Assembly (NCBI GenBank): GCA_963924565.1
Contig: OZ004613.1
Span: forward strand, 27,404,001 to 27,468,000
DNA: 64,000 bases
Source of the DNA: Ascidiella aspersa
Taxonomy: Eukaryota
Direction: 5' to 3'
Below are positions 23,243 through 62,039 of the stretch, piece after piece (position 1 is the stretch's first letter; the number at the start of each line of letters is the position of its first letter). The position numbers and the translations under genes were made by a program. The notes beneath the pieces are model-generated. The model searched no databases, was not told the origin of the DNA, and saw nothing but the letters and a program-made list of their open reading frames with translations.

Positions 23243-25058
23243 TGCGCAATTAATACAACAGTCTTTTAAAATAGCAAACAACAAATAGTTTGAATTCTTT
23301 AAATTAAATATCCAATTGCCAACTCGATGCAACGTACAAAGCTCCTCAAGCTATTAGACACACACGCAGTGCAGAAAATGGGCCGTGAATGGTTTGCTCG
23401 TTATAATGCACGAGGAGTTGAAAAAAGTCAAGGGTCTCGGGAGACTAGCGATAGAGTTGCGCACGCATTCGCCTACGTGATTTTATGCAGGTCTACAAAA
23501 GTAACGCGGAAGGTGGATAGTTTCACTCTGGAAAGTAATACTCATCGTTGTAAAAATTATTTAGATATCACTTAATTCTCAGGAAGTCTTTTGTAAAAAA
23601 ACTAAATCTAGGTCGACAACTTAAGTCAAAGACGAGTCTTTTTGAATAAATAGCAAGTCAAGTTCCAGTCAAGGCGTGATTGAACAAGTCAATTCCAATG
23701 AATTCCGTGTCATAAAAATGTAAACTTTAAACTAATAAAATCGGCAAACTAGTCCGGTTCTGAGAAATAAGTCAAAAAATATCACGAAATGAAACATATA
23801 GCTACCAGACTGTTTCATGTACAAAACTTAAAATAAATTACTCATTTTTATAAAACAAATATAATGAAAGCACTTCCAAGTCATTTGTCCAACGACTTAA
23901 TATATTTCGTCTAACAAGTTAGACCACCAATGTGGCTATTATATACCGCAACGCAATTGCAACTGCAAAAATCGTTTTGTCGGTATACCTTTCTGCCCAT
24001 ATAATATTTTTATTTTTGGTGCTATAAATTAAAAACTTTACTGTTACGCAAGTGCACACACGATTTCTAAAAATAAGTATAGGTTCGTTTCACAGCCTAG
24101 CCATAAAGTGGTAACATTTTTTTCTACAGGAAAAACGTTTTTTTCCTCATTACAACTTGGTGTCCAGCGGTTACTTGGAAGTAACGCAAAACAATGTTTA
24201 CTTACAAAGCTCAAAATGTTTTTCATATTTGAATCTCATATTCAACCGTAGTAAAACAAAACATAATATCATGCTTATTTGATATATTATTTCACAGGTT
24301 TCGTATTTTTATGGCTACCGACTATTTTTGTCATGCTAAAGTCTTTTTATTGCATTTTGTCAAGTTTAAATACCCATGGGGCATGTAGTACTCAAATGTT
24401 AAATGTCGGCATATTGAAAACAATTCTTTGTGTGTGCGATCAAAGATATGTGCTGACCACTTATGTTTGCTGACATTAAAAATACTCGTGAGAACAGATT
24501 ACCTTTTTATCAGTGAACACGCACACTCGCACAGTAACAAATTTCGCGATAAAGTGCGTTTTATTGGAGTTTATACTTGATGCTTGGCTACAGTAGATGC
24601 TTTAAGTTGTAATTAATTGTTAACGATAGTGCGACCTTACTGCCAGCCTCACTGAATGTAATAAAGTATGTATAGTCTCAGTACGTATATAATTTTGTTT
24701 ACCAAACAAATACAATTATCTAAAACCGCAGAAATACGTGGGGCTACTACTAATAAATCACTTAAGCGTGAAAATTAAGTGTGGGTATCTTTATCAGATG
24801 TTAAAATAAATGTTTTCATAACAGTTGCTCACCGTTGTTTTCATAACAGTTGCTCACCGGAAGTATATGTCGCTAAGAATTATTGTTTTAGAAAATGGCT
24901 TATTGTGTTTTCTATTTTGTCGGAAAATTAGCTTCCATCACAGGAGTTGGGCGACAAATAAGTTTTTTTTCCATTAAATATTTTATAAAGCTAAAATAAG
25001 TTGTTTTGGTTATTCAATTTGTTTTTCATGTCGTTCATCTGTTCTTCGGTAGAAACAA

Positions 25059-27239
25059 TTACAATTCATACAACTGATTGTCAACTTCTCTTTTCTGATC
25101 TTCTAAATCTCTATCGCCGTATAAAACATTGTGAGCTTCTTCTTTATTGTTGTACAAAGCTTCGGTGTCTTCTTTTTTCTGATCGTTCGGTTTTGTCTGG
25201 CCGTATAAAATATTGTCGACTTCTTTTCTTTCGTCCTGATTCCACGAAGAGTAAACGGGATTGGATACAATTTCTCCTTTTTCAATATTGCTTGCAAATT
25301 CGTACGCGTTGTCAGATGCAGTTGTAATGTTTTTATCGTAACTTAAATACAAAACGTTGTTGGCCACTTCTCTTTCAACATGTAGTGCTGCGTCGAAGGG
25401 TTTTGTTTTATGTTCAGCAGACAGATTTTGCCTTTTGCGTCTTTTAGTTATGAAGCACACAACAAAGATAACTAACAAGATTGCGACTCCAGTTAAAACC
25501 AAACCAACAGCTAACCCCGTAGTGAAGGGTAACTGGCCATTCACTGGCGTTGTTTGGCGTTGAGCTGAGGTTGAGTTATGACTCGGCAAAGTAGATGGGT
25601 AGAAACTTATCGTCTGAGTATTACTTTGTACAGTTTTTATTAATGGTTTGAAGCCAGTGGTGGAAACTGCAATATCAATGACCTGCATGAAAGTTGTTGT
25701 CTGTTTTCTTGTTGAAATTAAATTCGATATTCTAGAAGTAGTACTTGCTGCTTGTGTTGATAACTTGGTGCTTGTAACAGCTATTTAAACAAAAAAGGAT
25801 CAGCACTTGGTTAGTAAATATGTTTAAAAAAACATTACTGAGATCAAGCTTAATAAAACATTCCAATCTTACTGCAATAGTCAATACTTAAAAATAAAAA
25901 AATCCTTCGATTTTTAGGTTTGTTTTAACAGGTAAAATTTTTATTCAACAGCATCATATCATCAGTGTTAAAATGCATGAAAGTTCTTTAATAGCGTCAA
26001 AAATTATTGCAGATGGAATGTAATATAAGCTTTACACAACAAAACGTAAACGATTTTACAAACTTTACCGGCAACTGAAAAGGAACTGTGATAACTCCCC
26101 CAATGTTTTGTAGTAATCTCATTCTTGGTACTTCCATCGTATCTGCTTAATCCCTCGATGTTATGAACAATAACAGGCCCTCCACTATCTTAAGGAAATT
26201 TGCCATTTTAGCTACCTAACATTACAATAAAACCTTTTGAACCATGATTGAGAAATAGAAATAATGTTGAAGGCCTTTAGTTCACTGAAATAAAATTAAA
26301 ATCTTTTCAAATACCATAATATTAATTGCGGTATTTATTTTTCTTGACTAAAATCCTGACTAGTTGCTTTATTATTGGAAACAAGTTACGAAGCAAAGTA
26401 TTTTGCCAAAAAAAGTAATTCCACGTTAAGTCACTTTCAATTAATAGCGCGCTAAGTGCAAGTGATATGCACACAAAAATAACTGTTACACTATTAAAAC
26501 ACCCTCGTCTCATTTTATCCAGACAAGTGTTTTTCGAGCAAATACCAAAACCTAAACATAAAGCATGGAAACTGATTTACGTGCACAGGTAAAAATATAG
26601 ACCCCTTGTGAAGATTTTGAACAGAAACCATGACATTCAGCTTTATGATTTTTTTGTAGATCAAATTATTATTGATTGAAATCACATCAAGTCAAGACTT
26701 TTTCAAGCAGTGTTGGACTTGAGGGTATACAAGTCATTAAATACTAATTTTTTGGCTACAGTTTCAAAAATCTAGTGTGTTATGATAAACTTGTTATTGC
26801 AATTACTTGTGATAACGCCGGCATGAATGGCCGCCTTGCAAATAGACGAGTCGGAAGTGTAAATATCGGTTCCCCAAACTCTTGTATTATCATTCCTGCA
26901 TCCTTGTGGACAGATGACAGTGAATATTTTTGAACTTTCTGAATCAGCCGTTTTACTGCAAGAAACTGCAAATAAAGTTCAATGTTACCATTATCATGAA
27001 GAAATATTTATAAAAAAAAATCATCTAAACAAAAGGTGACCACAACTGTTAACTGCTCAAGAACGCAAAATTCCTGTACACTTGTTTATAAGAAGAATTA
27101 TTTACTGAATTAATTGTCATGCTATTAGCAAATCACCTGCACTGTTTACCAATAGGGGTAACTCAATCCAAATCAATATCCATAACAGTTGTTTTGTTCT
27201 CAATCTGCCTTTCAATATAACGAAGGCAATTAAAGCCAT
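25059..27239 (-). CDS. LCCL receptor copy 1, intact (signal-LCCL-S/T stalk-TM-NxxY-repeat tail), ~367 aa
   Basis: complement(join(25059..25780,26069..26188,26807..26965,27137..27239)). [86 protein letters not shown]. Tail NVLY, NAY, NPVY, NILY, ALY, NVLY, NQLYEL. The ATG used by copies 2 and 3 is lost (TTG at 27203); an in-frame ATG lies at 27239. Confidence 0.85.
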
Positions 27240-28261
27240 ATTTACTATTTGAAATAAACTTCGTACTTATTTAATTGTCTTCAAATCAACTCTCTTCATC
27301 AATAAACAGATGCGCGGCCAGTATTTCTCCGCGGTTTTGTGCTTATTGTCGTATTTTAGTCTTTTACCTCCTGCTTTTGTAATGCAGCACAGTTCAATAA
27401 AGGTATACTTAATTTAACCGCTTGACAGGCTATATTACCTATGAATAGAGTTAGCTCCACCGGGCAACATATCAATAAATATAAATCGCTCTTCTGGTGT
27501 AAACGAAGTATAAACCGACGTTTATATTACCAATGGTTGATTTTTGACCAGATACGCGTTACAAAGAACAAAGAGGGAACGTATGACTACATCAAACTGT
27601 TCTTGCACAACATTTTACGCCCCTCATTATTCATACAACTATACTTTGTAATTATACCTACCTACACATTCTGTATACTATACATGTCTACAAGTGCATG
27701 CTGACAATATTAATAAGTGAATGCCTTTACATTGATTTAGTTTGTCGTTTATAAATTTCCCCATTAGTCTACCGATGTATACCTTTTTAAACAAGTAACT
27801 GCAGGTTCCCCATTTTCGTCGGCATTCTCGCATATACTCTATAAATTCAATCATTAAAAGGAAAATGGAAGACGATGTACAAAGTTTATTAAAAAAACGA
27901 AAAAATTATAATGATTTTTTTCTATATAGGATACCCAAATGAAGAGTTTATGTCGACTATCTTTGACGTAGTTTTGTGTAATTGGTAAAGTGATCCTTCG
28001 GAATAAAGTTCAGGCCACTTCACATAACGTGTATTCGCGAGCCATTGTACAAATTTAGTTGTACCATTTTGCTTTAAAATTCTCAAGTAAATCTAAGACT
28101 TACCAATTCTTGTTTTTATAACGCATTTCGAGTGTTGCTTAATATTTTATTGATTACAGATCATAACCTTCCAAAAAGTAAATAATAGAGTAGTTGAGTT
28201 GAGTAATTCTCACGAGTAACGTCACCTAAAAGGTATGGAACCACTGACATAAGGTCTGTAG

Positions 28262-28640
28262 CAGTGTTGTAATGACTTAAGGCAATGACTTGACTTACAC
28301 TGGTTTAAATGACTTGAATTGACTTTAAGTCTTTTCAAATAACTCAGGTCGGAATGAACTGTTTTCCTTAAGTATTTTTTTTAAATTGAGCTATTTCTGA
28401 AAGTCTTTGCACATAAAACAAATATTGTCTTTTTCTTACTTTTTAGTTTATTTATTGTCCATAATCGTACTATAGTTTAAAAGTTATAATAGTTTAACGT
28501 TTTATTTTTATGACAAGAACGTGACTTGAAGTTGACTTGCTCTAATTATGACTTGACTGGGATTATTGTGACTTGATTAGTTATTCAAAAAGACTTGCCT
28601 TGGACTTCAGTTATTTTAAAATGACGTGTTTACCACACTG
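28262..28640. mobile_element. AAGTC/GACTT-family hAT MITE (same insertion at 40773-41149 and 53553-53931)
   Basis: CAGTGTTGTAA...TTACCACACTG; perfect 8-bp TSD gtctgtag in all three units. Confidence 0.9.
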
Positions 28641-29800
28641 GTCTGTAGTATGGTATTACTAATCAAGTAACAAAATTCCTGGCCATAATTTGACATCGCA
28701 GTAGCATACCTCGATTTATTGTCACTATTAATAGCACAAAAACGCAAATGACAACGTCACAGGCACTAATGCCACAAAGACAGCACAAAAAACACAAAGC
28801 CAACATAGAGTAGGTGGTGAGGCAAAAGAGTTGGAGTGGGTGTTGAGTAATTATTTTTAGCCGCGGGCCGCATGAGGAAATTAAAGTGCTGTGGCGGGCC
28901 GAGTCAAAAATAGGATGTGGTATACACGCAATATGACGTCATACTAAATCAAAAAAGCTACCCAATTTGTTATTACGTTTGGAGTTGTGCAAAAATTTGC
29001 AATTTAATTTGAATTTAAAGTAGGTCACGAGACATCGTGCGAAGCGCGAAACAATTGCGGCTATGTTTGTTTTAAAGTGCAAAATTTAATTTAGTTTTGG
29101 GGTTACGTGAAGCATTAGGCAGAGGCAAAAAATGTACATTGCTTGATATATTGGCGTTTGTAGGGCGCGTTGACCCAAAAGTTTAGATTAAAATACGTAA
29201 AAATTCGGTACAAAAACGTAACATGTTTTTTATTCTTTTTAAAGCTTCAAGTTACCGATGTGTTACATGCGGTACAACGGCCACATTGCAAAGACAGTTT
29301 AATTTGGGAGAAATGCACAACAATTTTTCTGTAAAGATGCAAAACATCGCATGGAACATACGAGAAAGACAGAAGACAATCGCGTAAAGCGGGAAAACAA
29401 TTTTCGTTATAGTATTTAAATCAGGCTAAAAATCGAATTTGGTGGGGTCTTGACTAAATTATGTATTTTAAGCAAAATAGGCCGCAGGCCGGTTTAAAAT
29501 GCTTAGCGGGCCGTGCCGTATGTTGCCGCAATCTGGTCTACAGTGACCAAAACAAGACATGTTTGCGATTTCCTTTAATTTTTGAAGACTTAAGATACTC
29601 GGACCAGGTGACGACTGTGGCTTGACATTTTGTTTCTAAGCAAACAGTATAGAAATCATACGATTTTATAAATATTGTGTTTAAATGACGTTAAATTTGT
29701 ACAATTATTTTGTAAATGAAGGTGCAATATGATAGAATATAGTTCTGCAATATGATAGAACACAGTTGTAAAGAGCTGATTCCAGTTGTCAAAGCAAGAG

Positions 29801-32800
29801 TTAAAAGTGATTTTCGTACACTGGCGTGTTGTTTTGACTTGACTCGACATTGGCCGGGATGGTTACATATTCCACTTCTGCCTTGGAGGGCAGTTGTGGG
29901 TTCATTTCGACGTAATCCCCATCTTTGGAATGAACTGGAAAAACTGGATTGGGTTGAATGTAACCATCCTCTTCGTCAACATTTGACACTTTCCCTGTTA
30001 AAAATGCTCATATTGTTCGATTGTGTCTTTATTTGGTAAGCTTGCAAACACTAGAAAAAGGGTCGTGAAAACCAAAAGGTTGGGAACAATCGCTCACTCA
30101 TGTTGCTGTATGCCTTGACCATGGACCAATGTTCTCATTCGTGGGTCAGAGTTACAACCCGTATGATTATATTTTTTGTTGATATTTAGACTACTGAATG
30201 ACATATTGTTGCTTAAACAAATATTTTGCATTTAGATAACTTACTTTCGATATAGACATAGTTGTGGGGTTCTGATATTGCCAATGGATTTTCATTTGTA
30301 GTATCTTCTACTTGTTGGATTAATATCTGCTTCAGGCGACATCTGACACAAAGAACACAGTTCAGTATTAGTGCAAGATACTTATCGTCAGGGTTGGATC
30401 CAAGCAGTGAAAGGCATGAGGCCATTCTTCCCCTCCAAACTGTATTTTTGTCCATTTAAACTAGGCAAATGCATTTTTTCTTATGAGTTCAAATTATTGT
30501 CATACAATGTCTTGGCCCAATTTAATTAAATCGTTAAACCCAAAAGGCATCGTTCGTCCCCTCGCACCCTTCAAAATGGCAATTGGCATTTTAAACAATG
30601 TTTTTTCGCTGTGCGCGAATCGATACATCTTTGTAATGTAACTTTTTTATCGACAGTAACACCTCTGCAACCTAAAACTTTAACGAAATAAACGAACTTT
30701 AGGTTAATTTTCATGACGTTACGTTTACATTATATTTCGTGATTTCACATTTTAAAGTAACTTTTTGAAGTCAATTCGGACAAAACTTTACGGTCCACCC
30801 CCAAACAAAAATCCTAGATCCGCACGGCTTATCGGTAATAAAAACATAGGGCAACTTAATTTTTTTTATTAAACCACAGAGGAGAATTCATCAGCTTATC
30901 CAGACATAGGGATTGGGATATTACTATAACTCTATAAAGCCGCTAGGTACACTTGCGTCACGTAAGGTACTTACCCTCTACAGCGCCACCACCAAAGGGC
31001 AGCAGAGATGCACAGAATGATAAGTAGTATTGCGGATATCGCAGTTATTACTTCAACGTTCGAACGTTCATTGATGTGTGTGTTTGCTTCTGAAAATTCG
31101 GTAAAAACAAAACAAGATATACGTGAATTAAAGGTATAGTGGCCCTGAAGACAAATATGCAAATCTGATGACGTCACTGACAGTTTATACGTGATAAAAA
31201 AAATCAGTAAAACTAAAATTATAAATCTACAAACTAAAAAAATGTTAAATTTGTTCATTCTGTAGGCTATGTGATGTTATGGACTCCAGCCATAAGCCCG
31301 AAATAAGAACAACATCAACATCAAAAGGAAACAGTTCGGAATAAGACCAAAATATGTCTAACACCTTATAGCCGTAATACCGTCCATATCGAAATAAGTA
31401 AACCCGTCGAAATAAGAACAGCATCAACATCAAAAGGAAACAGTTTGGAATAAGACCAAAATATGTCTAACACCTTATAGCCGTAATACCTTCTATATCG
31501 AAATAAGGCCAAAATTTGGACATTGAGTCCTTATTCGGATGACTTTAGGACGTATTCCGGGTGGGTTTATGTCTTATTCAGACGATTTAGATCTTATGTT
31601 TTCATTATTGCGTACCGGTATTTGGCTTCATTATGTCGCTGATCTTAGTGCTATCATATTGTAGATTTTTCTGGTTTAGGATTGTTGCTTTTTAGGTATT
31701 ATTGTGTTCCCGATGTGAATTACTATTGTTTTCCTAAATATTATAATTCTAAGCACCGTCTTATTACTATTAGCGGTTGCCCCAATACCTGTCAAAGTTT
31801 GAACAGTTGAAGCCACAGACGCTGCGTTGGTTTGATTGATGAGCGGACGTGACCCGCTAGCTGTCGGCAACGAAGGAGCTAGAACTTAAACATAGCTGGT
31901 CTTAGAAAAACGAGGCCCAGTCAAAAGAGCAACCTGGATGTGTAGAATAAGAATACATCTCCACGCCCCTATTACACGTAAATGACGACAATGACTTCAA
32001 ATGGGAGCAAATATTCGTTGGACTTTCCTGTTTTGTCAAAGTCAGTCATTTATACATTCTATTCATTTAAAAGAGAAATATATTTTACCACAAAACAAGG
32101 TATCATCAGTGTCTTTATTTGAATGAATCTATCATGTCAAAATATGGCATTTTAAACGGACATTGTAATTATAGGAACAACTTAATGAAACGAGAAAATT
32201 ACAATTTATTGCATTACAAAGAAAAATAAACTAACTTTTGGAACAGGCGACAAAATGTTAAGTGCGACTTTCACGTAAAATAGAATTGTATTTGGTTGGC
32301 GCAAGTCAACAAATTATATAAGTCTTGCGTTTTAGGGGAAATTGTAGGAAATACGCGGAAAATTCACACGTTCTCTATGGTCTAACTAATTTTTTTTACG
32401 TTTAGGCGGCGAAATATTTGACTTAATTCCCAGTCAAGACATTCGTAAAATATCTGAAGTACAAGTCAAGTCTTTTCGAATAGATAACAAGTCAAATCTC
32501 AGTCCAAGGTAAGTCCCAGTAAATTCACAATTAGACCAAGTCGACTTAAGTCAAGTTAAAACTGGTAAAGTCGTCATATTATGAGCAATGATTTAAGCAA
32601 AAAAAATACTTAATGCAAGATATAGCAAGAAAGATGTTTTATGCCCGAAAATTAAGGTGAATTACCCAATGTTTGAAAAACCTGCTTGATGGAACACTTG
32701 TCCAAAAGAATTAAGTCAAGTCAGACATTTAAAATCTGCGACTTAAGTGCACTTTATTTCATTGACTTAAGTAAATACAATACTGATAGTATCACAATCC

Positions 32801-35233: not shown

Positions 35234-36015
35234 TACGTGGCCAATGCACCAGTAGTTTGATATGATTAAAACAGTAAAAGTACTTTTTTATAAAAACTGA
35301 ATAACTCAATTTCATTTAAATATAATAGTTCTCTTCTTTTAAACAGGCGGTGCTCAGTGCTTTTTACTATACTTATTTGCCACGAAGTTGACTAAAGATA
35401 GACCTTATTATGCAGCCTTATTACCTTATCGTAAATCTTGTGCATATAGTAGGGGTTTGACGCAGTATTTCCAATACGCCTTAGCAATAAGGAAATCATG
35501 ACCACGTCAAACTGCCTATTCAACCTTTCACTTCCCCTTATTGTTCGTGCTGCTTTCTAATTCCCCATCATGTACTGTATTAATCTTATTTCCGCATTAC
35601 TTTACACCTGACAACACTTACAGGTGTAAACCTTTTGATCAAGTAAGAAATGTTCAGCTTTAAAACTTTAGCACGTGGATACAATCTGAATCAGTCTTCT
35701 GTAAATATTGATAACGCAAAAGATATTCCAACTCACCTATATAGGATTTACCGTATCTTTCTACAATATTTTAGTTTTTATCTCTCAGTGTTATTCGTTC
35801 AAGTTTTTCATAAATAAACCGATCAGATATCTGTAAAAATCAAATGCACTTTAAGGGGACTTAAGGGGTTTGTATATTGCAACCGCTTCATGATAAAATT
35901 GGCTCAGTAAGAAAGGGTTCAGCCACTCAACTTTAATTTAATGACATTTTCAACCGCGTCATGTTTCAACAAGTGTCACATCAGTTTAGTCAAACGTTTC
36001 CATACGAGAAAAAAA

Positions 36016-51152: not shown

Positions 51153-52653
51153 TCAATGACATGCATAAAAGTTGTTCTGTTTTCTTGTTGAAATTAAATT
51201 CGATATTGTAGGAGTAGTACTTGCTGCTTGTGTTGCTAACTTGGTGCTTGTAACTGCTAATTAAACAAAAATGATGAGTACTTGTTTAAATATATTATAA
51301 AAACATTACTGAGATCAAGCTTAGTAAAACATTCCAATCTTACTGCAATAGTCAATACTTGAAAATAAAAAAATCCTTCGATTTTTAGGTTTGTTTTAAC
51401 AGGTAAAATTTTTATTCAACAGCATCATATCATCAGTGTTAAAATGCATGAACGTTCTGTAATAGCGTCACAAATTATTGCAGATGGAATGTAATACAAG
51501 CTTTACACAACAAAACGTAAAAGATTTTACAAACTTTACCGGCAACTGAAAAGGAACTGTGATAACTCCCCCAATGTTTTGTAGTAATCTCATTCTTGGT
51601 ACTTCCATCGTATCTGCTTAATCCCTCGATGTTATGAACAATAACAGGCCCTCCACTATCTTAAGGAAATTTGCCATTTTAGCTACCTAACATTACAATA
51701 AAACCTTTTGAACCATGATTTAGAAATAGAAATAATGTTGAAGGCCTTTAGTTCACTGAAATCAAATTAAAATCTTTTCAAATACCATAATATTAATTGC
51801 GGTATTTATTTTTCTTGACTAAAATCCTGACGAGTTGCTTTATTATTGGAAACAAGTTACGAATCAAAGTCGTTTGCATAAAAAAGTAATTCCATATGCA
51901 CACAAAAATATTTGATATGCACACAAAATAATTGTTACACTATTAAAGCACCCTCGTCTCATTTTATCCAGACAAGTGTTTTTCGAGCAAATACCAAAAC
52001 CTAAACATAAAGCATGGAAACTGATTTACGTGCACAGGTAAAAATATAGACCCCTTGTGAAGATTTTGAACAGAAACCATGACATTTAGCTTTATGATTT
52101 TTTGAGATCAAATTATTATTGATTGAAATCACATCAAGTCAAGACTTTTTCAAGCAGTGTTGGACTTGAGTGTATACAAGTCATTAAATACTATTTTTTG
52201 GCTTCTGTTTCAAATATCTAGTGTGTTATGAAAAACTTGTTATTGCAATTACTTGTGATAACGCCGGCATGAATGGCCGCCTTGCAAATAGACGAGTCAC
52301 AAGTGTAAATATCGGTTCCCCAAACTCTTGTACGATCATTCCTGCATCCTTGTGGACAGATGACAGTGAATACTTTCGAACTTTCTGAATCAGCCGTTTT
52401 ACTGCAAGAAACTGCAAATAAAGTTCAATGTTACCATTATCATGAAGAAATATTTATAAAAACAATCATCTAAAGTAAACAAAAGGTGACCACAACTGTT
52501 TACTGTTCAAGAACGCAAAATTCCTGTAGACTTGTTTATAGGAATTAATATTTACTGGCATAATTGTCATGCTATAAGCAAATCACCTGCACTGTTTACC
52601 AATAGGGGTAACGCAGTCCAAACCAATATCCACAAGAGTTGTTTTGTCTTCAT
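51153..52653 (-). CDS. LCCL copy 3: predicted secreted truncated form (or pseudogene); out-of-frame TM/tail remnant continues to ~50540
   Basis: complement(join(51153..51256,51540..51659,52253..52411,52587..52653)). Signal and LCCL are intact. A 2-bp deletion near 51176 gives ..STRKQNNFYACH* before the TM. A second stop lies at 50609 in the old tail frame. Confidence 0.65.
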
Positions 52654-54970
52654 TGCACGTTGTATTTGCCTTTCAATATGACGAAAGCAATTAAAGCCAT
52701 AGATAATATTTGAAATAAACTTCTTACTTTATTAATTGTCTTCAAATCAACTCTTTCCTCGATAAAGGGATGCGCGGACAGTATTTGCCAAATATTTGTG
52801 ATTATTGTCTTATTTTAGTCTTGTTTTGTCATATTTTAGTCCAACACTTCCTGCTTTTGTGATGCAGCAGAGTTCAATAAAGTTATGCTTAACTGAACTG
52901 CTTGACAGGCTATTGCCCGGTTTATATCAATCAAAAAATCATGACTACATCTGTTCCACAACCTTTTACGCTCCTTCATTATTCACGCAACTATGCGTAA
53001 CTAAACCTACCTACGCTTTCTGTATACGTGTCTACAAGTGCGTGCCGACAATAATAATAAGTTAATGCCTTTACATTGATTTAGTTTGTTGTTTATAAAT
53101 TTCCCCATTAGTCTACCGATGTATACCTTTTTAAAAAAGTAACTGCAGGTTCCCCATTTTCGTCGGCATTCTCGCATATACTCTATAAATGCAATCATTA
53201 AAAGGAAAATGGAAGACGATGTACAAAGTTTATTAAAAAAACGTCTCTTACGTAATTTTGTGTAATTGGTGAAGTGAAAACAGGGATCCTTCGGAATAAA
53301 GTTCAAGCCACTTCACATAACGTTTATTCGCGACCCATTGCACAAACTTTAGTTGTACCATTCTTTAAATGCTCAGAGTAAATCTAAGACTTACCAATTC
53401 TTGTTTTTTATAGCGCATTTCGAGTGTTGCTTAATATTTTATTGATTACAGATCATAACCTTCCAAAAAGTAAATAATAGAGTAGTTGAATTAAGTAATT
53501 CTCACGAGTAACGTCACTTGAAAGGTCTGGAACCACTGACATAAGTCTGTAGCAGTTTTGTAATGACTTAAGGCAATGACTTGACTTAAACTGTTTTAAA
53601 TGACTTGAATTGACTTTAAGTCTTTTCAAATCACTCAGGTCGGAATGAACTGTTTTCCTTAAGTATTTTTTTTAAATTGAGCTATTTCTGAAAGTCTTTG
53701 CACATAAAACAAATATTGTCTTTTTCTTACTTTTTAGTTTATTTATTGTTCATAATCGTACTATAGTTTAAAAGTTATAATAGTTTAACGTTTTATTTTT
53801 ATGACAAGGACGTGACTTGAAGTTGACTTGCTCTAATTATGACTTGACTGGGATTATTGTGGCTTGATTATTTATTCAAAAAGACTTGCCTTGGACTTCA
53901 GTTATTTTAAAATGACGTGTTTACCACACTGGTCTGTAGTATGGTATTACTAATCAAGTAACAAAATTCCTGGCCATAATTTGACATCGCAGTAGCATAC
54001 CTCGATTTATTGTCACTATTAATAGCACAAAAACGCAAATGACAACGTCACAGGCACTAATGCCACAAAGACAGCACAAAAAACACAAAGCCAACATAGA
54101 GTAGGTGGTGAGGCAAAAGAGTTGGAGTGGGTGTTGAGTAATTATTTTTAGCCGCCGGCCGCATGAGGAACTTAAAGTGCTGTGGCGGGCCGAGTCAAAA
54201 ATAGGATGTGGTATACACGCAATATGACGTCATACGAAATCAAAAAAGCTACCCAATTTGTTATTACGTTTGGAGTTGTGCAAAAATTTGCAATTTAATT
54301 CGAATTTAAAGTAGGTCACGAGACATCGTGCGAAGCGCGAAACAATTGCGGCTATGTTTGTTTTAAAGTGCAAAATTTAATTTAGTTTTGGGGTTATGTG
54401 AAGCATTAAGCAGAGGCAAAAAATGTACATTGCTTGATATATTGGCGTTTGTAGGGCTCGTTGACCCAAAAGTTTAGATTAAAATACGTAAAAATTCGGT
54501 ACAAAAACGTACCATGTTTTCGCGTAAAGCGGGAAAACAATTTTCGTTATAGTATTTAAATCAGGCTAAAAATCGAATTTGACGGGGTCTTGACTAAATC
54601 CGTCAACTTGCCCTTATTTTCGCTTAGCTTATGTATTTTAAGCAAAATAGGCCGCAGGCCGAATTAAAATGCTTAGCGGGCCGTGCCGTATGTTGCCGCA
54701 ATCTGGTCTACAGTAACCAAAACAAGACATGTTTGCGATTTCCTTTAATTTTCGAAGACTTAAGATACTCGGACCAGGTGACGACTGTGGCTTGACATTT
54801 TGTTTCTAAGCAAACAGTATAGAAATCATACGATTTTATAAATATTGTGTTTAAATGACGCTAAATTTGTACAATTATTTTGTAAATGAAGGTGCAATAT
54901 GATAGAATATAGTTCTGCAATATGATAGAATACAGTTGTAAAGAGCTGATTCCAGTTGGCAAAGCAAGAG

Positions 54971-57900
54971 TTAAAAGTGATTTTCGTACACTGGCGTGTT
55001 GTTTTGACTTGACTCGACATTGGCCGGGATGGTTACATATTCCACTTCTGCCTTGGAGGGCAGTTGTGGGTTCATTTCGACGTAATCCTCATCTTTGGAA
55101 TGAACTGGAAAAACTGGATTGGGTTGAATGTAACCATCCTCTTCGTCAACATTTGACACTTTCCCTGTTAAAAATGCTCATATTGTTCGATTGTGTCTTT
55201 ATTTGGTAAGCTTGCAAACACTAGAAAAAGGGTCGTGAAAACCAAAAGGTTGGGAACAATCGCTCACTCATGTTGCTGTATGCCTTGACCATGGACCAAT
55301 GTTCTCATTCGTGGGTCAGAGTTACAACCCGTATGATTATATTTTTTGTTGATATTTAGACTACTGAATGACATATTGTTGCTTAAACAAATATTTTGCA
55401 TTTAGATAACTTATACTTTCGATATAGACATAGTTGTGGGGTTCTGATATTGCCAATGGATTTTCATTTGTAGTATCTTCTACTTGTTGGATTAATATCT
55501 GCTTCAGGCGACATCTGACACAAAGAACACAGTTCAGTATTAGTGCAAGATACTTATCGTCAGGGTTGGATCCAAGCAGTGGAAGGCATGAGGCCATTCT
55601 TCCCCTCCAAACTGTATTTTTGTCCATTTAAACTAGGCAAATGCATTTTTTCTTATGAGTTCAAATTATTGTCATACAATGTCTTGGCCCAATTTAATTA
55701 AATCGTTAAACCCAAAAGGCATCGTTCGTCCCCTCGCACCCTTCAAAATGGCAATTGGCATTTTAAACAATGTTTTTTCGCTGTGCGCGAATCGATACAT
55801 CTTTGTAGTGTAACTTTTTTATCGACAGTAACACCTCTGAAACCTTAAACTTTAACGAAATAAACGAACTTTAGGTTAATTTTCATGACGTTACGTTTAC
55901 ATGATATTTCGTGATTTCACATTTTAAAGTAACTTTTTGAAGTCATTTCGAAAAAAACTTTACGGTCCACCCCCAAAAAAAATCCTAGATCCGCACGGCT
56001 TATCGGTAATAAAAACATAGGGCAACTTAATTTTTTTTTTTATTAAACCACAGAGGAGAATTCATCAGCTTATCCAGACATAGGGATTGGGATATTACTA
56101 TAACTCTATAAAGCCGCTAAGTACACTTGCGTCACGTAAGGTACTTACCCTCTACAGCGCCACCACCAAAGGGCAGCAGAGATGCACAGGATGATAAGTA
56201 GTATTGCGGATATCGCAGTTATTACTTCAACGTTCGAACGTTCATTGATGTGTGTGTTTGCTTCTGAAAATTCGGTAAAAACAAAACAAGATATACGTGA
56301 ATTAAAGGTATAGTGGCCCTGAAGACAAATATGCAAATCTGATGACGTCACTGACAGTTTATACGTGATAAAAAAAATCAGTAAAACTAAAATTATAAAT
56401 CTACAAACTAAAAAAATGTTAAATTTGTTCATTCTGTAGGCTATGTGATGTTATGGACTCCAGCCATAAGCCCGAAATAAGAACAACATCAACATCAAAA
56501 GGAAACAGTTTGGAATAAGACCAAAATATGTCTAACACCTTATAGCCGTAATACCTTCTATATCGAAATAAGGCCAAAATTTGGACATTGAGTCCTTATT
56601 CGGATGACTTTAGGACGTATTCCGGGTGGGTTTATGTCTTATTCAGACGATTTAGATCTTATGTTTTCATTATTGCGTACCGGTATTTGGCTTCATTATG
56701 TCGCTGATCTTAGTGCTATCATATTGTAGATTTTTCTGGTTTAGGATTGTTGCTTTTTAGGTATTATTGTGTTCCCGATGTGAATTACTATTGTTTTCCT
56801 AAATATTATAATTCTAAGCACCGTCTTATTACTATTAGCGGTTGCCCCAATACCTGTCAAAGTTTGAACAGTTGAAGCCACAGACGCTGCGTTGGTTTGA
56901 TTGATGAGCGGACGTGACCCGCTAGCTGTCGGCAACGAAGGAGCTAGAACTTAAACATAGCTGGTCTTAGAAAAACGAGGCCCAGTCAAAAGAGCAACCT
57001 GGATGTGTAGAATAAGAATACATCTCCACGCCCCTATTACACGTAAATGACGACAATGACTTCAAATGGGAGCAAATATTCGTTGGACTTTCCTGTTTTG
57101 TCAAAGTCAATCATTTATACATTCTATTCATTTAAAAGAGAAATATATTTTACCACAAAACAAGGTATCATCAGTGTCTTTATTTGAATGAATCTATCAT
57201 GTCAAAATATGGCATTTTAAACGGACATTGTAATTATAGGAACAACGTAATGAAACGAGAAAATTACAATTTATTGCATTACAAAGAAAAATAAACTAAC
57301 TTTTGGAACAGGCGACAAAATGTTAAGTGCGACTTTCACGTAAAATAGAATTGCATTTGGTTGGCGCAAGTCAGCAAATTATATAAGTCTTGCGTTTTAG
57401 AGGAAATTAGGAAATACGAGGACATAATTCAGTCTTTATTAGTCCTTTGTTAAATTGACACGTTCTCTATTGTCTAAATAATTTTTTTTACGTTTAGGCG
57501 GCGAAATATTTGACTTAATTCCCAGTCAAGACATTCGTAAAATATCTGAAGTACAAGTCAAGTCTTTTCGAATAGATAACAAGTCAAATCTCAGTCCAAG
57601 GTAAGTCCCAGTAAATTCACAATTAGACCAAGTCGACTTAAGTCAAGCTTTTGTCATAGAAATAAACTTTTAAGTTAAAACTGGTAAATTCGTCATATTA
57701 TGAGCAATGATTTAAGCAAAAAAAATACTTAATGCAAGATATAGCAAGAAAGATGTTTTATGCCCGAAAATTAAGGTGAATTACTCAATGTTTGAAAAAC
57801 CTGCTTGATGGAACACTTGTCCAAAAGAATTAAGTCAAGTCAGACATTTAAAATCTGCGACTTAAGTGCACTTTATTTCATTGACTTAAGTAAATACAAT

Positions 57901-60355
57901 ACTGACAGTATCACAACCCAAATATGCGACTACAAACGTAGTTTAAAAGCATTTTTAGAGAACATTTTTAGAGAAGTTCGAACTCACGACCTCCGTCTAT
58001 ACCGGGACCGTCGCTCTACTAACTGAGCAACACAGGCTTAGAGAGGGGCGGGTCGAGAAACAACATGACACCAATACTTGATAAAATAAGGTTTTTAAAA
58101 TTGCGCTTACCCTTACTGCAAGTGTAAGTGACGCTCAAGTATTTGTTCGTCGTTGAGCAATTGTTGCCAAATACATCATTCGTTGCGCTTAGCGTGCAGC
58201 TTGATTTACCGTCGCACATCGATCTCACTTTGTTCAATACACTTGAAGTGCATAGTACTCCGAAATGAGTTGTACCAGAAATCGGACAGCTGAAATCGGA
58301 ATAGTACAATTCTCATCATGTTGAAAATGTATATTGTATCCCCTGGTAAGAATATCAAAGCCCATACAGAAGTATAGGTATCATTCTGAACCTTTCGAAT
58401 ATCTCTTTATTGATTTTCAACATATTGTTTTTTTTGGAACGTTCAAACCGATCCCTACTTCTGTATCGGCTTTGATATTCTTACTGCGTCTTACCACAAC
58501 CTCAGTCATTATTCTAGGAATATATTTAGGGCAAATTTATAAACGCATAGTTTTGGTGCTGTCGCTACAGATATTGCATAGGTGGTAAAAACATAATTAT
58601 TTTGTTTTGATTTTGTCTTACCATCGACACGCTTTAAAATCAACGGTAACGGTAAGCATATGTTAACTACTTCGCGATGATCGTCTCGACCAATAATTCC
58701 CAAACTGTGTTTGTAAGTTCGGAAAGAGAGTATTTGTATTACGAATAGGCATACACGCAAACATTTTAGACTTAAAAACGTACTATTCATTACATGATAA
58801 TAGTTTCATTACACAACAATAGTTTAAGGAAGATTGTAAAATAATTCTCTTTTTTGGTCTGTTAAAATTGTGCTGCGAAACAGTTTTTTTTAGTGTGCCG
58901 CGAGCCAAATAAGTTTGGGAACCTAGACTCTGGTTATTTATCTTTGGTTTCGCAACGGAGTTAAGTCTTTCCTTACATTAATGTATCTTTTCGTCCATAA
59001 CTTGCACTCGTCACGTTAATATGATGATCTTGTAGACACTTGATTGTTAAAGTGGAACCCTCGCAAATGTTCAAGGTGTTTTGTCCTGCATTGGTAAAAT
59101 AGATAAAGCATAAAAAACAGTGTTTTGTGACTGTAGTCAATGATTTTGTTGAGGTGCACCTATAAGCTATTTTTTTAAAAGACTTGGTTTTCGTAAATTA
59201 GATTAATTATTATTTAACTTGAGTCATATGCGCAAGTGACTTGATAATTAAGTGCATTAACTGAATATATTCAGTAAAGTAGGTTATTAAGTTAATTACA
59301 ATGTATAAAAAATATTAAGCTATTTCTTTCGTTATTGATGTTTGCTATGACAAGTATTGCTCAGAGTGGACAGTGTTCACCGGGTTTGAAAGTGTCCTAT
59401 TTATTTTAAGTGTCAACGACGGTATTCGGATTTGCCTTGTTAAATGACTTATGCCCGAACTTAATTTATTCATGCCACAAATAACAACATGTAATGGATA
59501 TTAAAATGGCATACATATTTTAATTACCACTGTTGTTTCAGCATGGTAGAAGTAGGTTCAGGCTGTGATGTGACAAAATAAATCTTTAAAATAGCACAAT
59601 CATTTCTTAATATTAAAGTTGAATGGTGATCAAATATAAACTCGTGTGAACTACGCATGTTTAACAATAGCTCGTGTAGACCAATATGTTACACCTTAAT
59701 CATACATATTTACATCAAATTGATGTTGCCATCACATTACTAAACAGTCTAGGTCCAATCGCATACCACTTGTCTTAAATCGTCGCCAGCTGTTGTATCG
59801 CATTAATTACCGCGCCGCTCTTATTGATAAAATTGCAATTAACATTTCAAAATCTCAACCGAAGCAAGCGCATATTGCAGCAGCCATATTTCTTATAACT
59901 ACGTCAGGTTATGCGCGGCGCTGCTTTGCATTAGATCACCTTCCAGAAAGCCGTGGTTTACTTCTGATAGCATGTTATGTTTTTAAACTTTTCTTTAATC
60001 TGCACCGCTTTCTTTCATATTATATTTTTTACTTTTTTATCAATTTTATTATTATTTTGCTTTGTACAGTCAAACTTTGATGTGTATGGATTTTACTTCA
60101 CTTGTAGGAACGGGCCATCCCTATAGGCAAAATATATATTCCTTTATAAAAAATCTCGTTTTACTCGGGGGTTTTAAACTTCGAACTCTATTTTCCTTAT
60201 AACGAGGAACGCAAACCTACTGTCGAATCTAAAGGAGTTTGTCATACAAAACAGTTATGTTAATAGTCAAGATACAAATTACCTGCAGCAAACTTTGCAA
60301 TCCAAAGTAGATTAACCCAAACAAATATCATGAATAGTTGCTTTAAAATCTTCAT
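54971..60355 (-). CDS. SUEL/RBL type I membrane receptor copy 3, ~309 aa
   Basis: complement(join(54971..55164,55417..55514,56149..56263,56681..56752,56854..56943,58111..58289,58977..59085,60283..60355)). Loop CPISGTTHFGVLC. Frame intact; last donor is GTATAAGT. Confidence 0.83.
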
Positions 60356-61499
60356 TACGTGGCCAATGCACCAGTAGTTTGATATGATTAAAACAGTAAA
60401 AGTACTTTTTTATAAAAACTGAATAACTCAATTTCATTTAAATATAATAGTTCTCTTCTTTTAAATAGGCTGTGCTCAGTGCTTTTTACTATACTTATTT
60501 GCCAAGAAGTTGATTAAGATAGACCTTATTATGCAGCCTTATTACCTTATCGTAAATCTTGTGCCTATAGTAGGGGTTTGACGCAGTATTTCCAATACGC
60601 CTTAGCAATAAGGAAATCATGACCACGTCAAACTGCCTATTCAACCTTTCACTTCCCCTTATTGTTCGTGCTGCTTTCTAATTCCCCATCATGTACTGTA
60701 TTAATCTTATTTCCGCATTACTTTACACCTGACAACACTTACAGGTGTAAACCTTTTGATCAAGTATAAGAAATGTTCAGCTTTAAAACTTTAGCACGTG
60801 GATACAGTCTGAATCAGTCTTCTGTAAATATTGATAACGCAAAAGATATTCAAACTCACCTACATAGGATTTACCGTATCTTTCTACAATATTTTAGTTT
60901 TTATCTCTCAGTGTTATTCGTTCAAGTTTTTCATAAATAAACCGATCAGATATCTGTAAAAATCAAATGCAATACAATCGACTTAAGGGGTTTGTATATT
61001 GCAACCGTTTCATGATAAAATTGGCTCAGTAAGAAAGGGTTCAGCCAATCAACTTTAATGACATTTTCAACCGCGGCATGTTTCAATAAGTGTCACATCA
61101 GTTTGCTCAAACGTTTCCATACGAGAAAAAAACTAATGATCGCCTGTAGTTGATTATAGAACGTAATTTTATTCAAGTCTGTTTGACTAAGTTTTGGAAA
61201 TTCGGCTAACAAAATGATATGGTGCCCCTCACCCCTTGGTGCAGTGTTAAGCACGTGTTTATTTTGCTTTATGGTTGATCCAGACCTGTTTCATACCTTT
61301 TCCCACGATGTACCTATAGTGGTATTTTAAACTCCCTGCGTAACACCAGTTGGTACCCGGTTTTAGAGAAATGTATAACCTCAACCTATTTTTTTTGAAA
61401 CAAAAAGGTAAATTCGATCACAAAAAGAAATCACAAATAATTAGTCAAACAGAGTTGAATAAAATTACGTTTTATAATCAACTACAGGCGATCATTAGT

Positions 61500-62039
61500 A
61501 TATCACTGCTCTTGATTTACGTCGCAAGTGAAGATTCCTTATAGGCTTCTTTCACTCTTTCGACAAGTTTAGACATGAATAAGGTTTCTTAGAAACGGTG
61601 ACACACTGAATTACTAACAGCTTTAATTTAGCAAGGTATAGCACATGTCGCAAAACAATACACAGAAATAAATCGAACCCACATTTGCGATACAGAAGTC
61701 GCACACAGGATCATTGATTCTCATAAATTTAAAGCGAGCCATGCGTTTGTTCGACAGTCAAGCTGTTGCAGTATAGTTCGCAATTAGAGGCCTTAATACT
61801 TTGGTGCCCTATATATGTAATTGAGGGTCAAGTTGTGATCAATTTTTTTGGAAATAATTCTCATACCTTTAAACATTTATTGCGAGGTTTAAGATGATAC
61901 TTGAGAAAGAAAAATAAGCAAAGTATTATTTCAACCTTGCTAATTTGAGGTCTGAGTCGTTTGCCTATAGTTGTTTCATTAAACAACGATTAGTCTATAA
62001 GGAACCTTCACTTGCGCCGTAAATCAAGAGCAGTGATAT
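61500..62039. mobile_element. Non-autonomous DNA transposon with ~45-bp TIRs; right TIR truncated in units 1 and 2
   Basis: atatcactgctcttgatttacgtcgcaagtgaagattccttata (from 61500) is the reverse complement of tataaggaaccttcacttgcgccgtaaatcaagagcagtgatat (to 62039). Confidence 0.8.

What the first reader, a model, noticed from the sequence alone, without database searches (positions are those of the whole stretch)
24317..62011. RBL and LCCL receptor genes duplicated together as a two-gene cassette, three times
Seen: each 12.2-12.9 kb unit holds one RBL gene followed by one LCCL gene on the same strand. The tails are complementary: SH2-type motifs on RBL and PTB-type NxxY motifs on LCCL. Inference: possibly a paired-receptor or co-receptor module, though simple hitch-hiking could also explain the co-duplication.
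Basis: partly seen in the sequence, partly recalled or inferred. Interest (0 to 1): 0.75.

Follow-up and report, generated by a model that had tools for sequence, protein, structure and literature searches.

The report
Tandem triplicated lectin-receptor gene pair
A 12.5-kb stretch carrying two small lectin-type membrane-receptor genes is repeated three times head to tail, but only one of the two genes stays intact in every copy, so the second gene was most likely just carried along.

Summary
The repeat is real in this assembly. There are three head-to-tail units (24317-36894, 36895-49762, 49763-62011; 12.2-12.9 kb). On the minus strand each holds a 7-exon gene (signal peptide, one rhamnose-binding-lectin domain, stalk, membrane span, tyrosine-rich tail). 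About 2.3-2.6 kb downstream lies a 4-exon LCCL-domain gene with an NxxY tail.

The pairing idea does not hold up. The RBL gene is open in 3 of 3 units. The LCCL gene is full-length only in unit 1. Unit 2 loses its tail frame (16-nt deletion) and unit 3 stops before the membrane span (2-nt deletion).

Within the next 80 kb the same NxxY tail sits behind RBL domains, and the RBL-type tail sits behind a WxxW domain. So the tails are shuffled modules, not a fixed complementary pair. Of 6 other cluster genes checked, none repeats the RBL-then-LCCL neighbourhood.

One RNA run shows no reads on any laid exon. One independent DNA run shows single-copy depth and no unit-1 letters at most listed sites, so copy number is probably polymorphic; an assembly artefact is not fully excluded.

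Best reading: a recent segmental triplication inside a lineage-specific modular receptor cluster, with LCCL as a decaying passenger.

The parts
24317..36894 (.). Tandem unit 1 (12,578 bases)
   Evidence: Self-BLAST, repeat families, junction print.
36895..49762 (.). Tandem unit 2 (12,868 bases). It is the most diverged unit in the RBL lectin region.
   Evidence: Identity to units 1 and 3 falls to 53-89% per 500 columns between unit-1 positions 31644 and 34680.
49763..62011 (.). Tandem unit 3 (12,249 bases). It is a mosaic: the RBL part is close to unit 1, the LCCL part mostly close to unit 2.
   Evidence: Unit 1 vs unit 3 is 95.8-100% alike per block from 28216 to 34680. Units 2 and 3 are the closest pair in 4 of 7 blocks from 24317 to 27737.
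29801..35233 (-). RBL receptor gene, unit 1. Seven exons: 35233-35161 (signal peptide), 33970-33862 and 33173-32992 (RBL domain), 31878-31789 (stalk), 31089-30975 (membrane span), 30342-30245 and 29994-29801 (tail and stop).
   Evidence: Splice sites and phases, Pfam SUEL_Lectin, matches to solved rhamnose-binding lectins 5h4s and 2zx0.
42333..48252 (-). RBL receptor gene, unit 2. All 7 exons are open. The lectin exons are 89% and 83% identical to unit 1 at DNA level, and it has 'DPC' where units 1 and 3 have 'NNC'.
54971..60355 (-). RBL receptor gene, unit 3. All 7 exons are open. It differs from unit 1 mostly in one loop of the second lectin exon (58111-58289).
   Evidence: 11 of 13 coding differences from unit 1 lie in exon 3.
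25059..27239 (-). LCCL receptor gene, unit 1, full-length. Four exons: 27239-27137 (signal peptide, read from an upstream ATG), 26965-26807 and 26188-26069 (LCCL domain), 25780-25059 (stalk, membrane span, NxxY tail, stop).
   Evidence: (borders and phases), Pfam LCCL, signal-peptide exon alignment, motif counts.
37669..39800 (-). LCCL gene copy, unit 2, damaged. It has its own ATG at 39800. A 2-nt deletion in exon 2 stays in frame only if a second AG 10 nt downstream is used. A 16-nt deletion in exon 4 shifts the tail frame after the first NxxY motif. There is also a TGG>TAG change in the old frame.
50534..52653 (-). LCCL gene copy, unit 3, damaged. It has its own ATG at 52653 and an open LCCL domain. 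A 2-nt deletion 80 nt into exon 4 gives a stop after 33 codons, before the membrane span. Further on lie a GAA>TAA change and two more deletions.
27401..29600 (.). High-copy repeats (27401-27600 and 28201-29600) that fill most of the 2.56-kb gap between the RBL stop and the LCCL start in unit 1.
   Evidence: DNA depth is 75-1,926 there against about 6 elsewhere; hundreds of copies about 80% alike across the genome.

Best explanation
This is a young segmental tandem triplication, probably variable in copy number between individuals. It lies inside a cluster of about 140 kb of small, lineage-specific, modular type-I membrane receptors. The repeated unit happens to span two neighbouring genes of that cluster. 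One is an RBL-domain receptor whose tail carries SH2-type tyrosine motifs. The other is an LCCL-domain receptor whose tail is an array of (E)VxNxLY motifs. A first non-homologous duplication created the 'unit end|unit start' junction. Unequal crossing-over or gene conversion between units then gave the third copy and the mosaic pattern. After duplication the RBL copies stayed open: the tail is constrained and the lectin exons diverge. The extra LCCL copies collected frame-breaking lesions. LCCL was therefore co-duplicated because it sits next door, not because the two proteins must work together. Shown: the units, junctions, gene models, lesions, shuffled tails, lack of RNA in one run, and single-copy depth in one other individual. 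Inferred: the order of events, the signalling role of the motifs, and copy-number polymorphism.
For: Units and identical junction type.
Gene models: 11 of 11 exons with proper borders and phases; Pfam domains.
RBL is open in 3 of 3 units and LCCL is full-length in 1 of 3.
dN/dS for RBL outside the lectin exons is 0.29-0.42. The last tail exon, unit 1 vs unit 2, has 4 synonymous and 2 non-synonymous changes over 39.7 and 149.3 sites. The lectin exons give 0.69-0.87. LCCL gives 0.69-0.83 and has stops in the old frame.
Mosaic identity.
Only three copies of the RBL 3' part exist in the 308.6-Mb assembly.
The NxxY tail sits behind RBL domains at 94.8-97.9 and 136.5-139.9 kb, with splice phases that fit at the first. 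An L4-like stalk and membrane span follow two RBL domains at 106.9-111.8 kb. The R-type membrane span and tail sit behind a Mucin2_WxxW domain at 74.6-76.9 kb.
The L4-type tail is confined to 7 loci of this cluster plus one weak hit.
A profile of 5 tails against 1.84 billion proteins gave 7 hits, the best at E 1e-7.
In DNA run X6 the mean depth over 24401-27400 is 6.29 against 6.27 expected for one copy (hand arithmetic).
In X1, five different contigs cross 25779. One contig would start at 24317 if it is colinear with the assembly.
X2 shows a single contig type at each of the 36 listed sites between 24433 and 25863. Its exon-4 contig has only the in-frame +6.
Against: No read set from the assembled individual was available, so three copies in one molecule rest on the gap-free assembly alone.
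The lesions in units 2 and 3 could not be checked in reads: 56 indel rows were not shown.
The unit-2 exon-2 deletion can be bypassed by a second acceptor. Units 2 and 3 could therefore encode altered products (tail-shifted, or secreted) rather than dead genes.
The dN/dS counts are small (2-30 changes).
The absence of RNA comes from about 6% of a single run of unknown tissue.
Unit 1's own LCCL start is unusual: the canonical ATG was lost in an 11-nt deletion.
Confidence: 0.68

Rival explanations
1. Paired or co-receptor module. RBL and LCCL receptors act together with complementary SH2- and PTB-docking tails, and are kept and amplified as a unit by selection.
For: Same strand, 2.3-2.6 kb apart, and co-duplicated three times. 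The unit-1 tails differ in motif class. Both tails are conserved among paralogues.
Against: The LCCL partner is disrupted in 2 of 3 units. The NxxY tail occurs behind RBL domains elsewhere in the cluster, and the R-type tail behind WxxW. None of 6 other cluster genes checked has this neighbourhood. No RNA was seen for either gene. The gap between the genes is mostly transposon-like repeat.
Confidence: 0.08
2. Assembly artefact. Divergent alleles, or sequences from several individuals, at a single-copy (or two-copy) locus were stacked in tandem.
For: DNA run X6 has single-copy depth (6.29 vs 6.27 expected) and no unit-1 letters at 33 of 36 listed sites. Run X2 shows a single contig type at those 36 listed sites. 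The units differ by 2-8%, which is in the range of allelic divergence in some invertebrates. Unit 3 looks like a recombinant of units 1 and 2.
Against: The window has no gap. The novel junction 'unit end|unit start' was assembled twice with different neighbouring letters. There are three distinct sequence types for both gene regions, more than a diploid single-copy locus can hold. X1 shows up to 5 contigs at one site and a contig that would begin at the unit's first base. X6 and X2 are other individuals: at 19 of the 36 listed sites the alternative letter matches none of the three units. The 36 sites are the best-supported of 441 and so are a biased sample.
Confidence: 0.12
3. Adaptive amplification of the RBL receptor. 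Selection favours more and more diverse RBL recognition domains, as in immune or self-recognition gene clusters, and LCCL is a passenger being lost. This refines the best explanation rather than excluding it.
For: RBL is intact in all units. Divergence is concentrated in the lectin exons (dN/dS 0.69-0.87 vs 0.29-0.42 elsewhere). Of 13 coding differences between units 1 and 3, 11 lie in one loop-bearing exon. The tail and signal-peptide exons are 97-100% alike. There are signs of copy-number and sequence polymorphism between individuals.
Against: dN/dS is below 1 everywhere, so positive selection is not shown. No expression was seen. The loop cluster could be a small gene-conversion tract. Only three sequences were compared.
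Confidence: 0.25

Closest known systems
EVA-1 / EVA1C (C21orf63), a single-pass Slit co-receptor with RBL domains
   Same: A type-I membrane protein whose ectodomain is built from SUEL/RBL lectin domains. Passages of PMC2430599 read describe EVA-1 as a single-transmembrane protein with two extracellular RBL domains acting as an SLT-1/Slit co-receptor.
   Different: Here there is one RBL domain, not two. Pfam found no EVA1/FAM176-type family on the membrane-span piece or the last tail exon of the RBL gene; the first tail exon was not scanned. The tail is a tyrosine-motif array with no relatives outside this genome's clusters.
DCBLD1/DCBLD2 (ESDN), LCCL-containing scaffold receptors
   Same: A single-pass receptor with an LCCL domain outside and a multi-tyrosine docking tail inside. 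The search listing and abstract start of PMC6029619 call DCBLD2 a transmembrane scaffolding receptor; its title says that phosphorylation by Fyn and Abl drives its interaction with CRKL.
   Different: The ectodomain here is LCCL only, with no CUB or discoidin domain in the gene. The tail has 5 NxxY and 0 YxxP. There is no sequence relationship beyond the LCCL domain.
Latrophilin/ADGRL and soluble rhamnose-binding lectins (SUEL, CSL3, PDB 5h4s)
   Same: The same lectin fold family. The second lectin exon matches 5h4s (E 6.9e-30), CSL3 2zx0 (E 1.5e-15) and latrophilin RBL 2jx9 (E 0.002).
   Different: Those are 7TM adhesion receptors or secreted multi-domain lectins. Here a single domain sits on a stalk, one membrane span and a signalling tail. 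Units 1 and 3 have 'NNC' where the solved lectins have 'DPC'.
Tandemly duplicated, copy-number-variable innate receptor clusters (for example the NK-receptor complexes of vertebrates; recalled, not searched)
   Same: A cluster of small receptors with interchangeable ectodomain and tail modules, recent tandem duplicates, pseudogenised copies, and differences between individuals.
   Different: The domains are unrelated (RBL, LCCL and WxxW instead of Ig or C-type lectin). No immune role, ligand or expression is known.

Membership tests
SUEL/RBL lectin domain (Pfam PF02140) | Profile match above the curated cut-off | tested here: met
   The second lectin exon of unit 1 scores 45.0 bits against a cut-off of 31.4. 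The first exon alone scores 20.1 bits, below the cut-off. Paralogue exons score 54.3 and 52.7 bits.
SUEL/RBL lectin domain (Pfam PF02140) | Eight-cysteine pattern with YGR and KYL motifs (motif names recalled) | tested here: met
   There are 2 + 6 cysteines in the two exons, and YGR and KYL are present in 3 of 3 units. 'DPC' is kept only in unit 2; units 1 and 3 have 'NNC'.
SUEL/RBL lectin domain (Pfam PF02140) | Binds rhamnose or galactosides | not testable with these tools
   PMC2430599 (passages) names Glu42 and Lys120 of latrophilin RBL as key residues. Their mapping onto this protein is my inference only.
LCCL domain (Pfam PF03815) | Profile match above the curated cut-off | tested here: met
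   Exon 2 of unit 1 scores 67.1 bits against a cut-off of 22.6. Exon 3 alone scores 19.3 bits.
EVA-1/EVA1C | Two extracellular RBL domains and an EVA1-type cytoplasmic region | tested here: not met
   There is one RBL domain per gene. No FAM176 match was found on the membrane-span piece or the last tail exon of the RBL gene; the first tail exon was not scanned.
DCBLD1/2 | CUB + LCCL + discoidin ectodomain and a YxxP-rich tail | tested here: not met
   Only LCCL lies between the signal peptide and the stalk. The unit-1 LCCL tail has 0 YxxP.
Obligate paired/co-receptor gene module | Both partners kept intact in every duplicated unit | tested here: not met
   RBL is intact in 3 of 3 units and LCCL is full-length in 1 of 3.
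Obligate paired/co-receptor gene module | The same neighbourhood recurs for paralogues or in relatives | tested here: not met
   None of 3 other LCCL genes and none of 3 other RBL genes in the 164-kb region has the RBL-then-LCCL same-strand arrangement. The only other RBL/LCCL proximity, on contig C4, is a single mosaic gene. Other species could not be searched.
Obligate paired/co-receptor gene module | Co-expression and physical association | tested here: inconclusive
   The RNA run X7 shows zero depth on all 6 laid exons of the two genes; about 6% of the run was read. Association cannot be tested with these tools.
Tandem segmental duplication / copy-number variant | Head-to-tail units sharing one novel junction | tested here: met
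   The same junction lies at 36894|36895 and at 49762|49763, and both flanks are unrelated to it.
Tandem segmental duplication / copy-number variant | Raised read depth in independent reads | tested here: inconclusive
   X6 has a depth of 6.29 against 6.27 expected for one copy. X1 shows several contig types (up to 5). X2 shows one type at the listed sites. None of these runs is the assembled individual.

The most novel reading that the evidence does not exclude
The array is the fast-evolving core of an undescribed, lineage-specific recognition-receptor complex. Small receptors are built by shuffling phase-1 ectodomain exons (RBL, LCCL, WxxW) onto two conserved tyrosine-signalling tails. Copy number and sequence vary between individuals, RBL lectin loops diversify, and redundant partners decay. 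This would be a functional analogue of vertebrate NK-receptor complexes, or of an allorecognition locus, built from different domains.
Probability: 0.2. Interest if true: 0.65.

Novelty: new variant of a known kind. Interest (0 to 1): 0.33.

Why it matters
As a co-duplicated receptor pair it matters little, because the evidence points to a passenger gene. The surrounding picture is more useful. This is a compact cluster in which lectin-type ectodomains and two tyrosine-motif tails are recombined by exon shuffling. It has fresh duplicates, decaying copies and differences between individuals. The tail family found no clear relatives among 1.84 billion proteins. That makes it a small, tractable case for studying how new receptor families are assembled and turned over in an invertebrate. 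It is also a candidate immune or self-recognition locus worth an expression survey.

Tried and rejected
One gene rather than two: rejected. The RBL gene ends in a stop after its own membrane span and tail, and the LCCL gene has its own signal-peptide exon. No RNA was available to confirm this.

The LCCL signal-peptide exon is broken in units 2 and 3: rejected. One search showed stops when the exon is read from unit 1's ATG. Units 2 and 3 carry 11 extra bases with their own ATG, which gives a canonical signal peptide. It is unit 1 that lost that ATG.

The unit-2 exon-2 deletion kills the LCCL domain: weakened. A second AG 10 nt downstream restores the frame.

A second RBL/LCCL pair on contig C4: rejected. 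It is one large mosaic gene with trefoil, discoidin, C-type lectin, RBL and LCCL exons.

Calibrating read depth with the intergenic repeat: abandoned. The genomic copies are about 80% alike and too many to count (913 candidates, 40 scored).

Relatives of the LCCL stalk/tail exon by word search: none. A profile search gave only weak hits to uncharacterised crab, mussel and krill proteins with ENSLY/DNILY repeats and no RBL or LCCL domain. I do not count these as family members.

Literature: one search for 'rhamnose-binding lectin' + 'LCCL' + 'transmembrane' found 2 papers, and neither title nor abstract start describes such receptors (listing only).

Not done. Spliced models were never joined for any search or fold. 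Every exon was searched on its own, so no structure was predicted for the RBL or LCCL domain, each of which is split over two exons. The RBL-type tail was searched only within this genome, not in public protein sets, because its exons are too short for the length window. No supplementary files were opened; Figure 1 and the supplement of PMC2430599 may hold the residue alignment that I only inferred.

Full report
WHAT IS THERE. The window (contig C7, 27,404,001-27,468,000, of a 308.6-Mb, 75-contig, AT-rich eukaryote assembly) holds three head-to-tail units: 24317-36894, 36895-49762 and 49763-62011. They are 12,578, 12,868 and 12,249 bases long. Self-BLAST gives long blocks 90.7-98.6% alike, and the window has no N. 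All 20 listed repeat families have three copies spaced 12.1-13.0 kb. The new adjacency 'unit end|unit start' occurs twice, with a few different neighbouring letters each time, and neither outer flank resembles it. That pattern fits one non-homologous founding duplication followed by unequal exchange between units. Only these three copies of the RBL gene's 3' part exist in the assembly, at 100, 99 and 92% identity. The other 37 matches are an intronic repeat.

GENE MODELS. Both genes are on the minus strand.
- The RBL gene of unit 1 has seven exons: signal peptide 35233-35161; RBL domain 33970-33862 and 33173-32992; Ser/Thr stalk 31878-31789; membrane span 31089-30975; tail 30342-30245 and 29994-29801.
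- The LCCL gene starts 2,561 bases downstream and has four exons: 27239-27137, 26965-26807, 26188-26069 and 25780-25059.
- All 11 exons have AG/GT borders (or ATG/stop) and compatible phases. The ectodomain modules are bounded by phase-1 introns.
- Pfam gives SUEL_Lectin at 45.0 bits (cut-off 31.4) and LCCL at 67.1 bits (cut-off 22.6). No family passes its cut-off on the stalk or tail pieces scanned.
- The lectin exons match solved rhamnose-binding lectins: 5h4s at E 6.9e-30 and CSL3 at 1.5e-15.
- I searched each exon separately and never joined a spliced model for a search or a fold.

THE THREE COPIES ARE NOT EQUAL. Projecting the exons onto units 2 and 3 shows the RBL gene open in 3 of 3 units. 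Its signal-peptide exon and first tail exon are 100% identical in all three. Its lectin exons are far more diverged in unit 2 (89% and 83% at DNA level). Unit 3 differs from unit 1 almost only in one loop of the second lectin exon, which holds 11 of 13 coding differences.

The LCCL gene fares worse:
- Unit 2 has a 2-nt deletion in exon 2, a 16-nt deletion and a TGG>TAG change in exon 4.
- Unit 3 has a 2-nt deletion 80 nt into exon 4, a GAA>TAA change and two more deletions.
- The unit-2 product keeps its membrane span and one NxxY motif, then runs into about 100 residues of frame-shifted Lys/Arg-rich sequence.
- The unit-3 product stops 33 codons into exon 4, before the membrane span.

Two caveats run against my reading. 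First, the unit-2 exon-2 deletion is exactly compensated if a second AG 10 nt downstream is used. Second, the apparent stops in the signal-peptide exon of units 2 and 3 disappear because those units carry 11 extra bases with their own ATG and a canonical signal peptide. It is unit 1 that lost that ATG and reads from an upstream one.

SELECTION. dN/dS is 0.29-0.42 for RBL outside the lectin exons. In the last tail exon, unit 1 vs unit 2 has 4 synonymous and 2 non-synonymous changes. The lectin exons give 0.69-0.87. LCCL gives 0.69-0.83 when read in unit 1's frame. All counts are small.

MOSAIC. Per 500 alignment columns, units 1 and 3 are 95.8-100% alike from 28216 to 34680, which covers the RBL gene and the spacer. 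Unit 2 is 53.5-98.3% alike there. From 24317 to 27737, units 2 and 3 are the closest pair in 4 of 7 blocks. All three are 96.3-99.6% alike from 34680 to the unit end. So at least one exchange or conversion followed the duplications.

CONTEXT: TAILS AND ECTODOMAINS ARE SHUFFLED. I fetched 100 kb around the window and mapped the exon translations. Positions beyond 64000 continue the window's numbering along the contig.
- LCCL + NxxY-tail genes lie at 3702-5969 (+) and 65.0-68.1 kb (+).
- Another LCCL gene lies at 21.2-22.2 kb (-).
- RBL + NxxY-tail genes lie at 94.8-97.9 kb (+) and 136.5-139.9 kb (+). At the first, the phase-1 donor and phase-1 acceptor fit.
- A gene with two RBL domains and the same stalk and membrane span lies at 106.9-111.8 kb (+).
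- A gene with a Mucin2_WxxW ectodomain (73.7 bits) and an RBL-type membrane span and tail lies at 74.6-76.9 kb (-).

The five intact NxxY tails share invariant blocks (NVLY, EVDN.LY, a C-terminal LY), whichever ectodomain they follow. Each carries 3-5 NxxY, including one NPxY. The 'PTB-type' tail is therefore not a property of LCCL receptors, and the 'SH2-type' tail is not a property of RBL receptors.

None of the 3 other LCCL genes has an RBL gene directly upstream on its strand, and none of the 3 other RBL genes has an LCCL gene directly downstream. The only other RBL/LCCL proximity in the genome, on contig C4, is a single large mosaic gene. The NxxY tail occurs at 7 loci of this cluster plus one weak hit on C2. 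The RBL-type tail has only 10 weak relatives, in a cluster on C2.

OUTSIDE THIS GENOME. A word search with the LCCL stalk/tail exon found nothing. Because the claim of lineage restriction rests on absence, I ran the exhaustive search with a profile of the five tails. It gave 7 hits at E<=0.001, none at E<=1e-10, among 1.84 billion proteins. The receptor-sized hits are uncharacterised crab, mussel and krill proteins with ENSLY/DNILY repeats and no RBL or LCCL domain. I treat them as motif look-alikes.

READS (24401-30400 of unit 1; likeness 88% or more).
- RNA run X7 (about 6% read, 7.8 million reads): depth is zero in 22 of 30 bins. These include every bin with an LCCL exon and the two RBL tail exons. 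The 8 bins with RNA are those where DNA depth is 75-1,926, that is, repeats.
- DNA run X6 (1,935.8 million letters read, against a 308.6-Mb assembly, so 6.27-fold is expected per copy): mean depth over the 15 bins from 24401 to 27400 is 6.29, and 5.34 over all 22 non-repeat bins (my arithmetic from the table). Three copies would give about 19.
- At 33 of 36 listed sites between 24433 and 25863, all X6 reads differ from unit 1. The alternative letters listed at these sites match unit 2 and/or unit 3 at 17 of the 36 sites, and none of the three units at 19. These 36 sites are the best-supported of 441, so they are a biased sample.
- Contig run X2 shows a single contig type at each of these listed sites. 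Its 826-base contig over LCCL exon 4 differs from unit 1 by 48 letters and a net +6 only. That is the unit-2/3-type stalk without their frameshifts. The RBL tail region differs by only 3 letters in 428.
- Contig run X1 has an exact unit-1 contig over the signal-peptide exon (342 bases, depth 25.8), up to 5 contigs at one site (25779), and a contig whose first base would fall on 24317 if it is colinear. A de Bruijn branch at the duplication boundary would give exactly that.

My reading of the reads: X1 is multi-copy, while X2 and X6 look single-copy and carry other haplotypes. None of the runs is the assembled individual. The array is probably a copy-number variant. A stacking artefact is unlikely, given the gap-free assembly, the two distinct junction copies and the three sequence types, but it is not excluded.

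WHAT IT WORKS LIKE. Each protein is a small type-I receptor: a signal peptide, one carbohydrate-binding-type domain on a Ser/Thr stalk, one membrane span, and a tail of short tyrosine motifs.
- The RBL tail has YIQP, YVEM, VEYVTI and YENH in 3 of 3 units (YQNH replaces YENH in unit 2).
- The LCCL tail follows the pattern hydrophobic-x-N-x-x-Y, which I recall as the minimal PTB-domain motif. This assignment, like the SH2 assignments, is inference from recalled consensus motifs and was not tested.

The closest known architectures are three.
- EVA-1/EVA1C has two RBL domains and one membrane span, and is a Slit co-receptor (PMC2430599, passages).
- DCBLD1/2 have a CUB-LCCL-discoidin ectodomain, are scaffolding receptors, and interact with CRKL on phosphorylation by Fyn and Abl (PMC6029619, listing, title and abstract start).
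- Latrophilin carries an RBL domain.

The defining features of the first two are not met (see the membership table). The resemblance is one of design, not of family.

VERDICT. It is wrong in implying three intact pairs. The duplication itself is ordinary. The modular, lineage-restricted receptor cluster around it is moderately interesting and deserves an expression and population survey. Notes of this scan on the same DNA (s1-801604, s1-801791, s1-802098, s1-801917, s1-802532) agree with the motif and cluster descriptions that I re-tested.

Noticed in passing
window 27137-27300 vs 39735-39847 and 52588-52700: Unit 1's LCCL gene lost its canonical start codon in an 11-nt deletion and reads in frame from an upstream ATG. 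In units 2 and 3 that upstream ATG opens a short separate reading frame. The unit-1 signal peptide is longer and has a Glu in its hydrophobic core.
   Followed up: yes
L007:596-2946 (window numbering 74.6-76.9 kb, minus strand): A gene with a Mucin2_WxxW ectodomain (73.7 bits), followed by a membrane span 67% identical to the RBL gene's and a related tail. The RBL-type tail module is therefore used with a third ectodomain.
   Followed up: partly
L008:798-3882 and L004/L010 (window numbering 94.8-97.9 and 136.5-139.9 kb, plus strand): RBL-domain receptors that carry the LCCL-type (E)VDNxLY tail, with up to four near-identical 'EVDNVLYGVSKVNDQKQ' repeats.
   Followed up: partly
window 3436-3796 (+): Two short extra copies of part of the LCCL first-half exon lie just upstream of the LCCL gene at 3702-5969. 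They look like a small local tandem duplication of an exon fragment.
   Followed up: no
window 7972-14992 (-): Several CUB-domain half exons (Pfam CUB, 37-41 bits) form a multi-CUB gene between the LCCL genes.
   Followed up: partly
window 15326-16182 and 16324-17200: An inverted repeat of about 870 bases, 84% alike, with arms 140 bases apart.
   Followed up: no
window 27401-27600 and 28201-29600: High-copy repeats between the two genes (DNA depth 75-1,926 against about 6). They are the only parts of the laid stretch with RNA reads.
   Followed up: partly
G000 contig C2, 5.88-6.32 Mb (minus strand): Ten weak matches (E 5e-4 to 9e-3) to the RBL gene's last tail exon, several with stops inside. 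This may be a second cluster of receptors with a related tail.
   Followed up: no
L005/L011 (G000 contig C4, 3,042,001-3,062,000, minus strand): One large mosaic gene with trefoil, discoidin, C-type lectin, RBL and LCCL exons. It is the only other place where RBL and LCCL exons lie within 5 kb of each other.
   Followed up: partly
L009 (window numbering 119.6-120.4 kb, minus strand): A lone RBL first-half exon lies downstream of an open frame resembling the second half of an LCCL domain. These may be gene fragments left by shuffling.
   Followed up: no
P0003, P0005, P0006: Uncharacterised type-I proteins of a crab, a mussel and a krill carry repeated ENSLY/DNILY tail motifs like the tail here, behind unrelated ectodomains. 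This could be a convergent or very old docking motif.
   Followed up: partly
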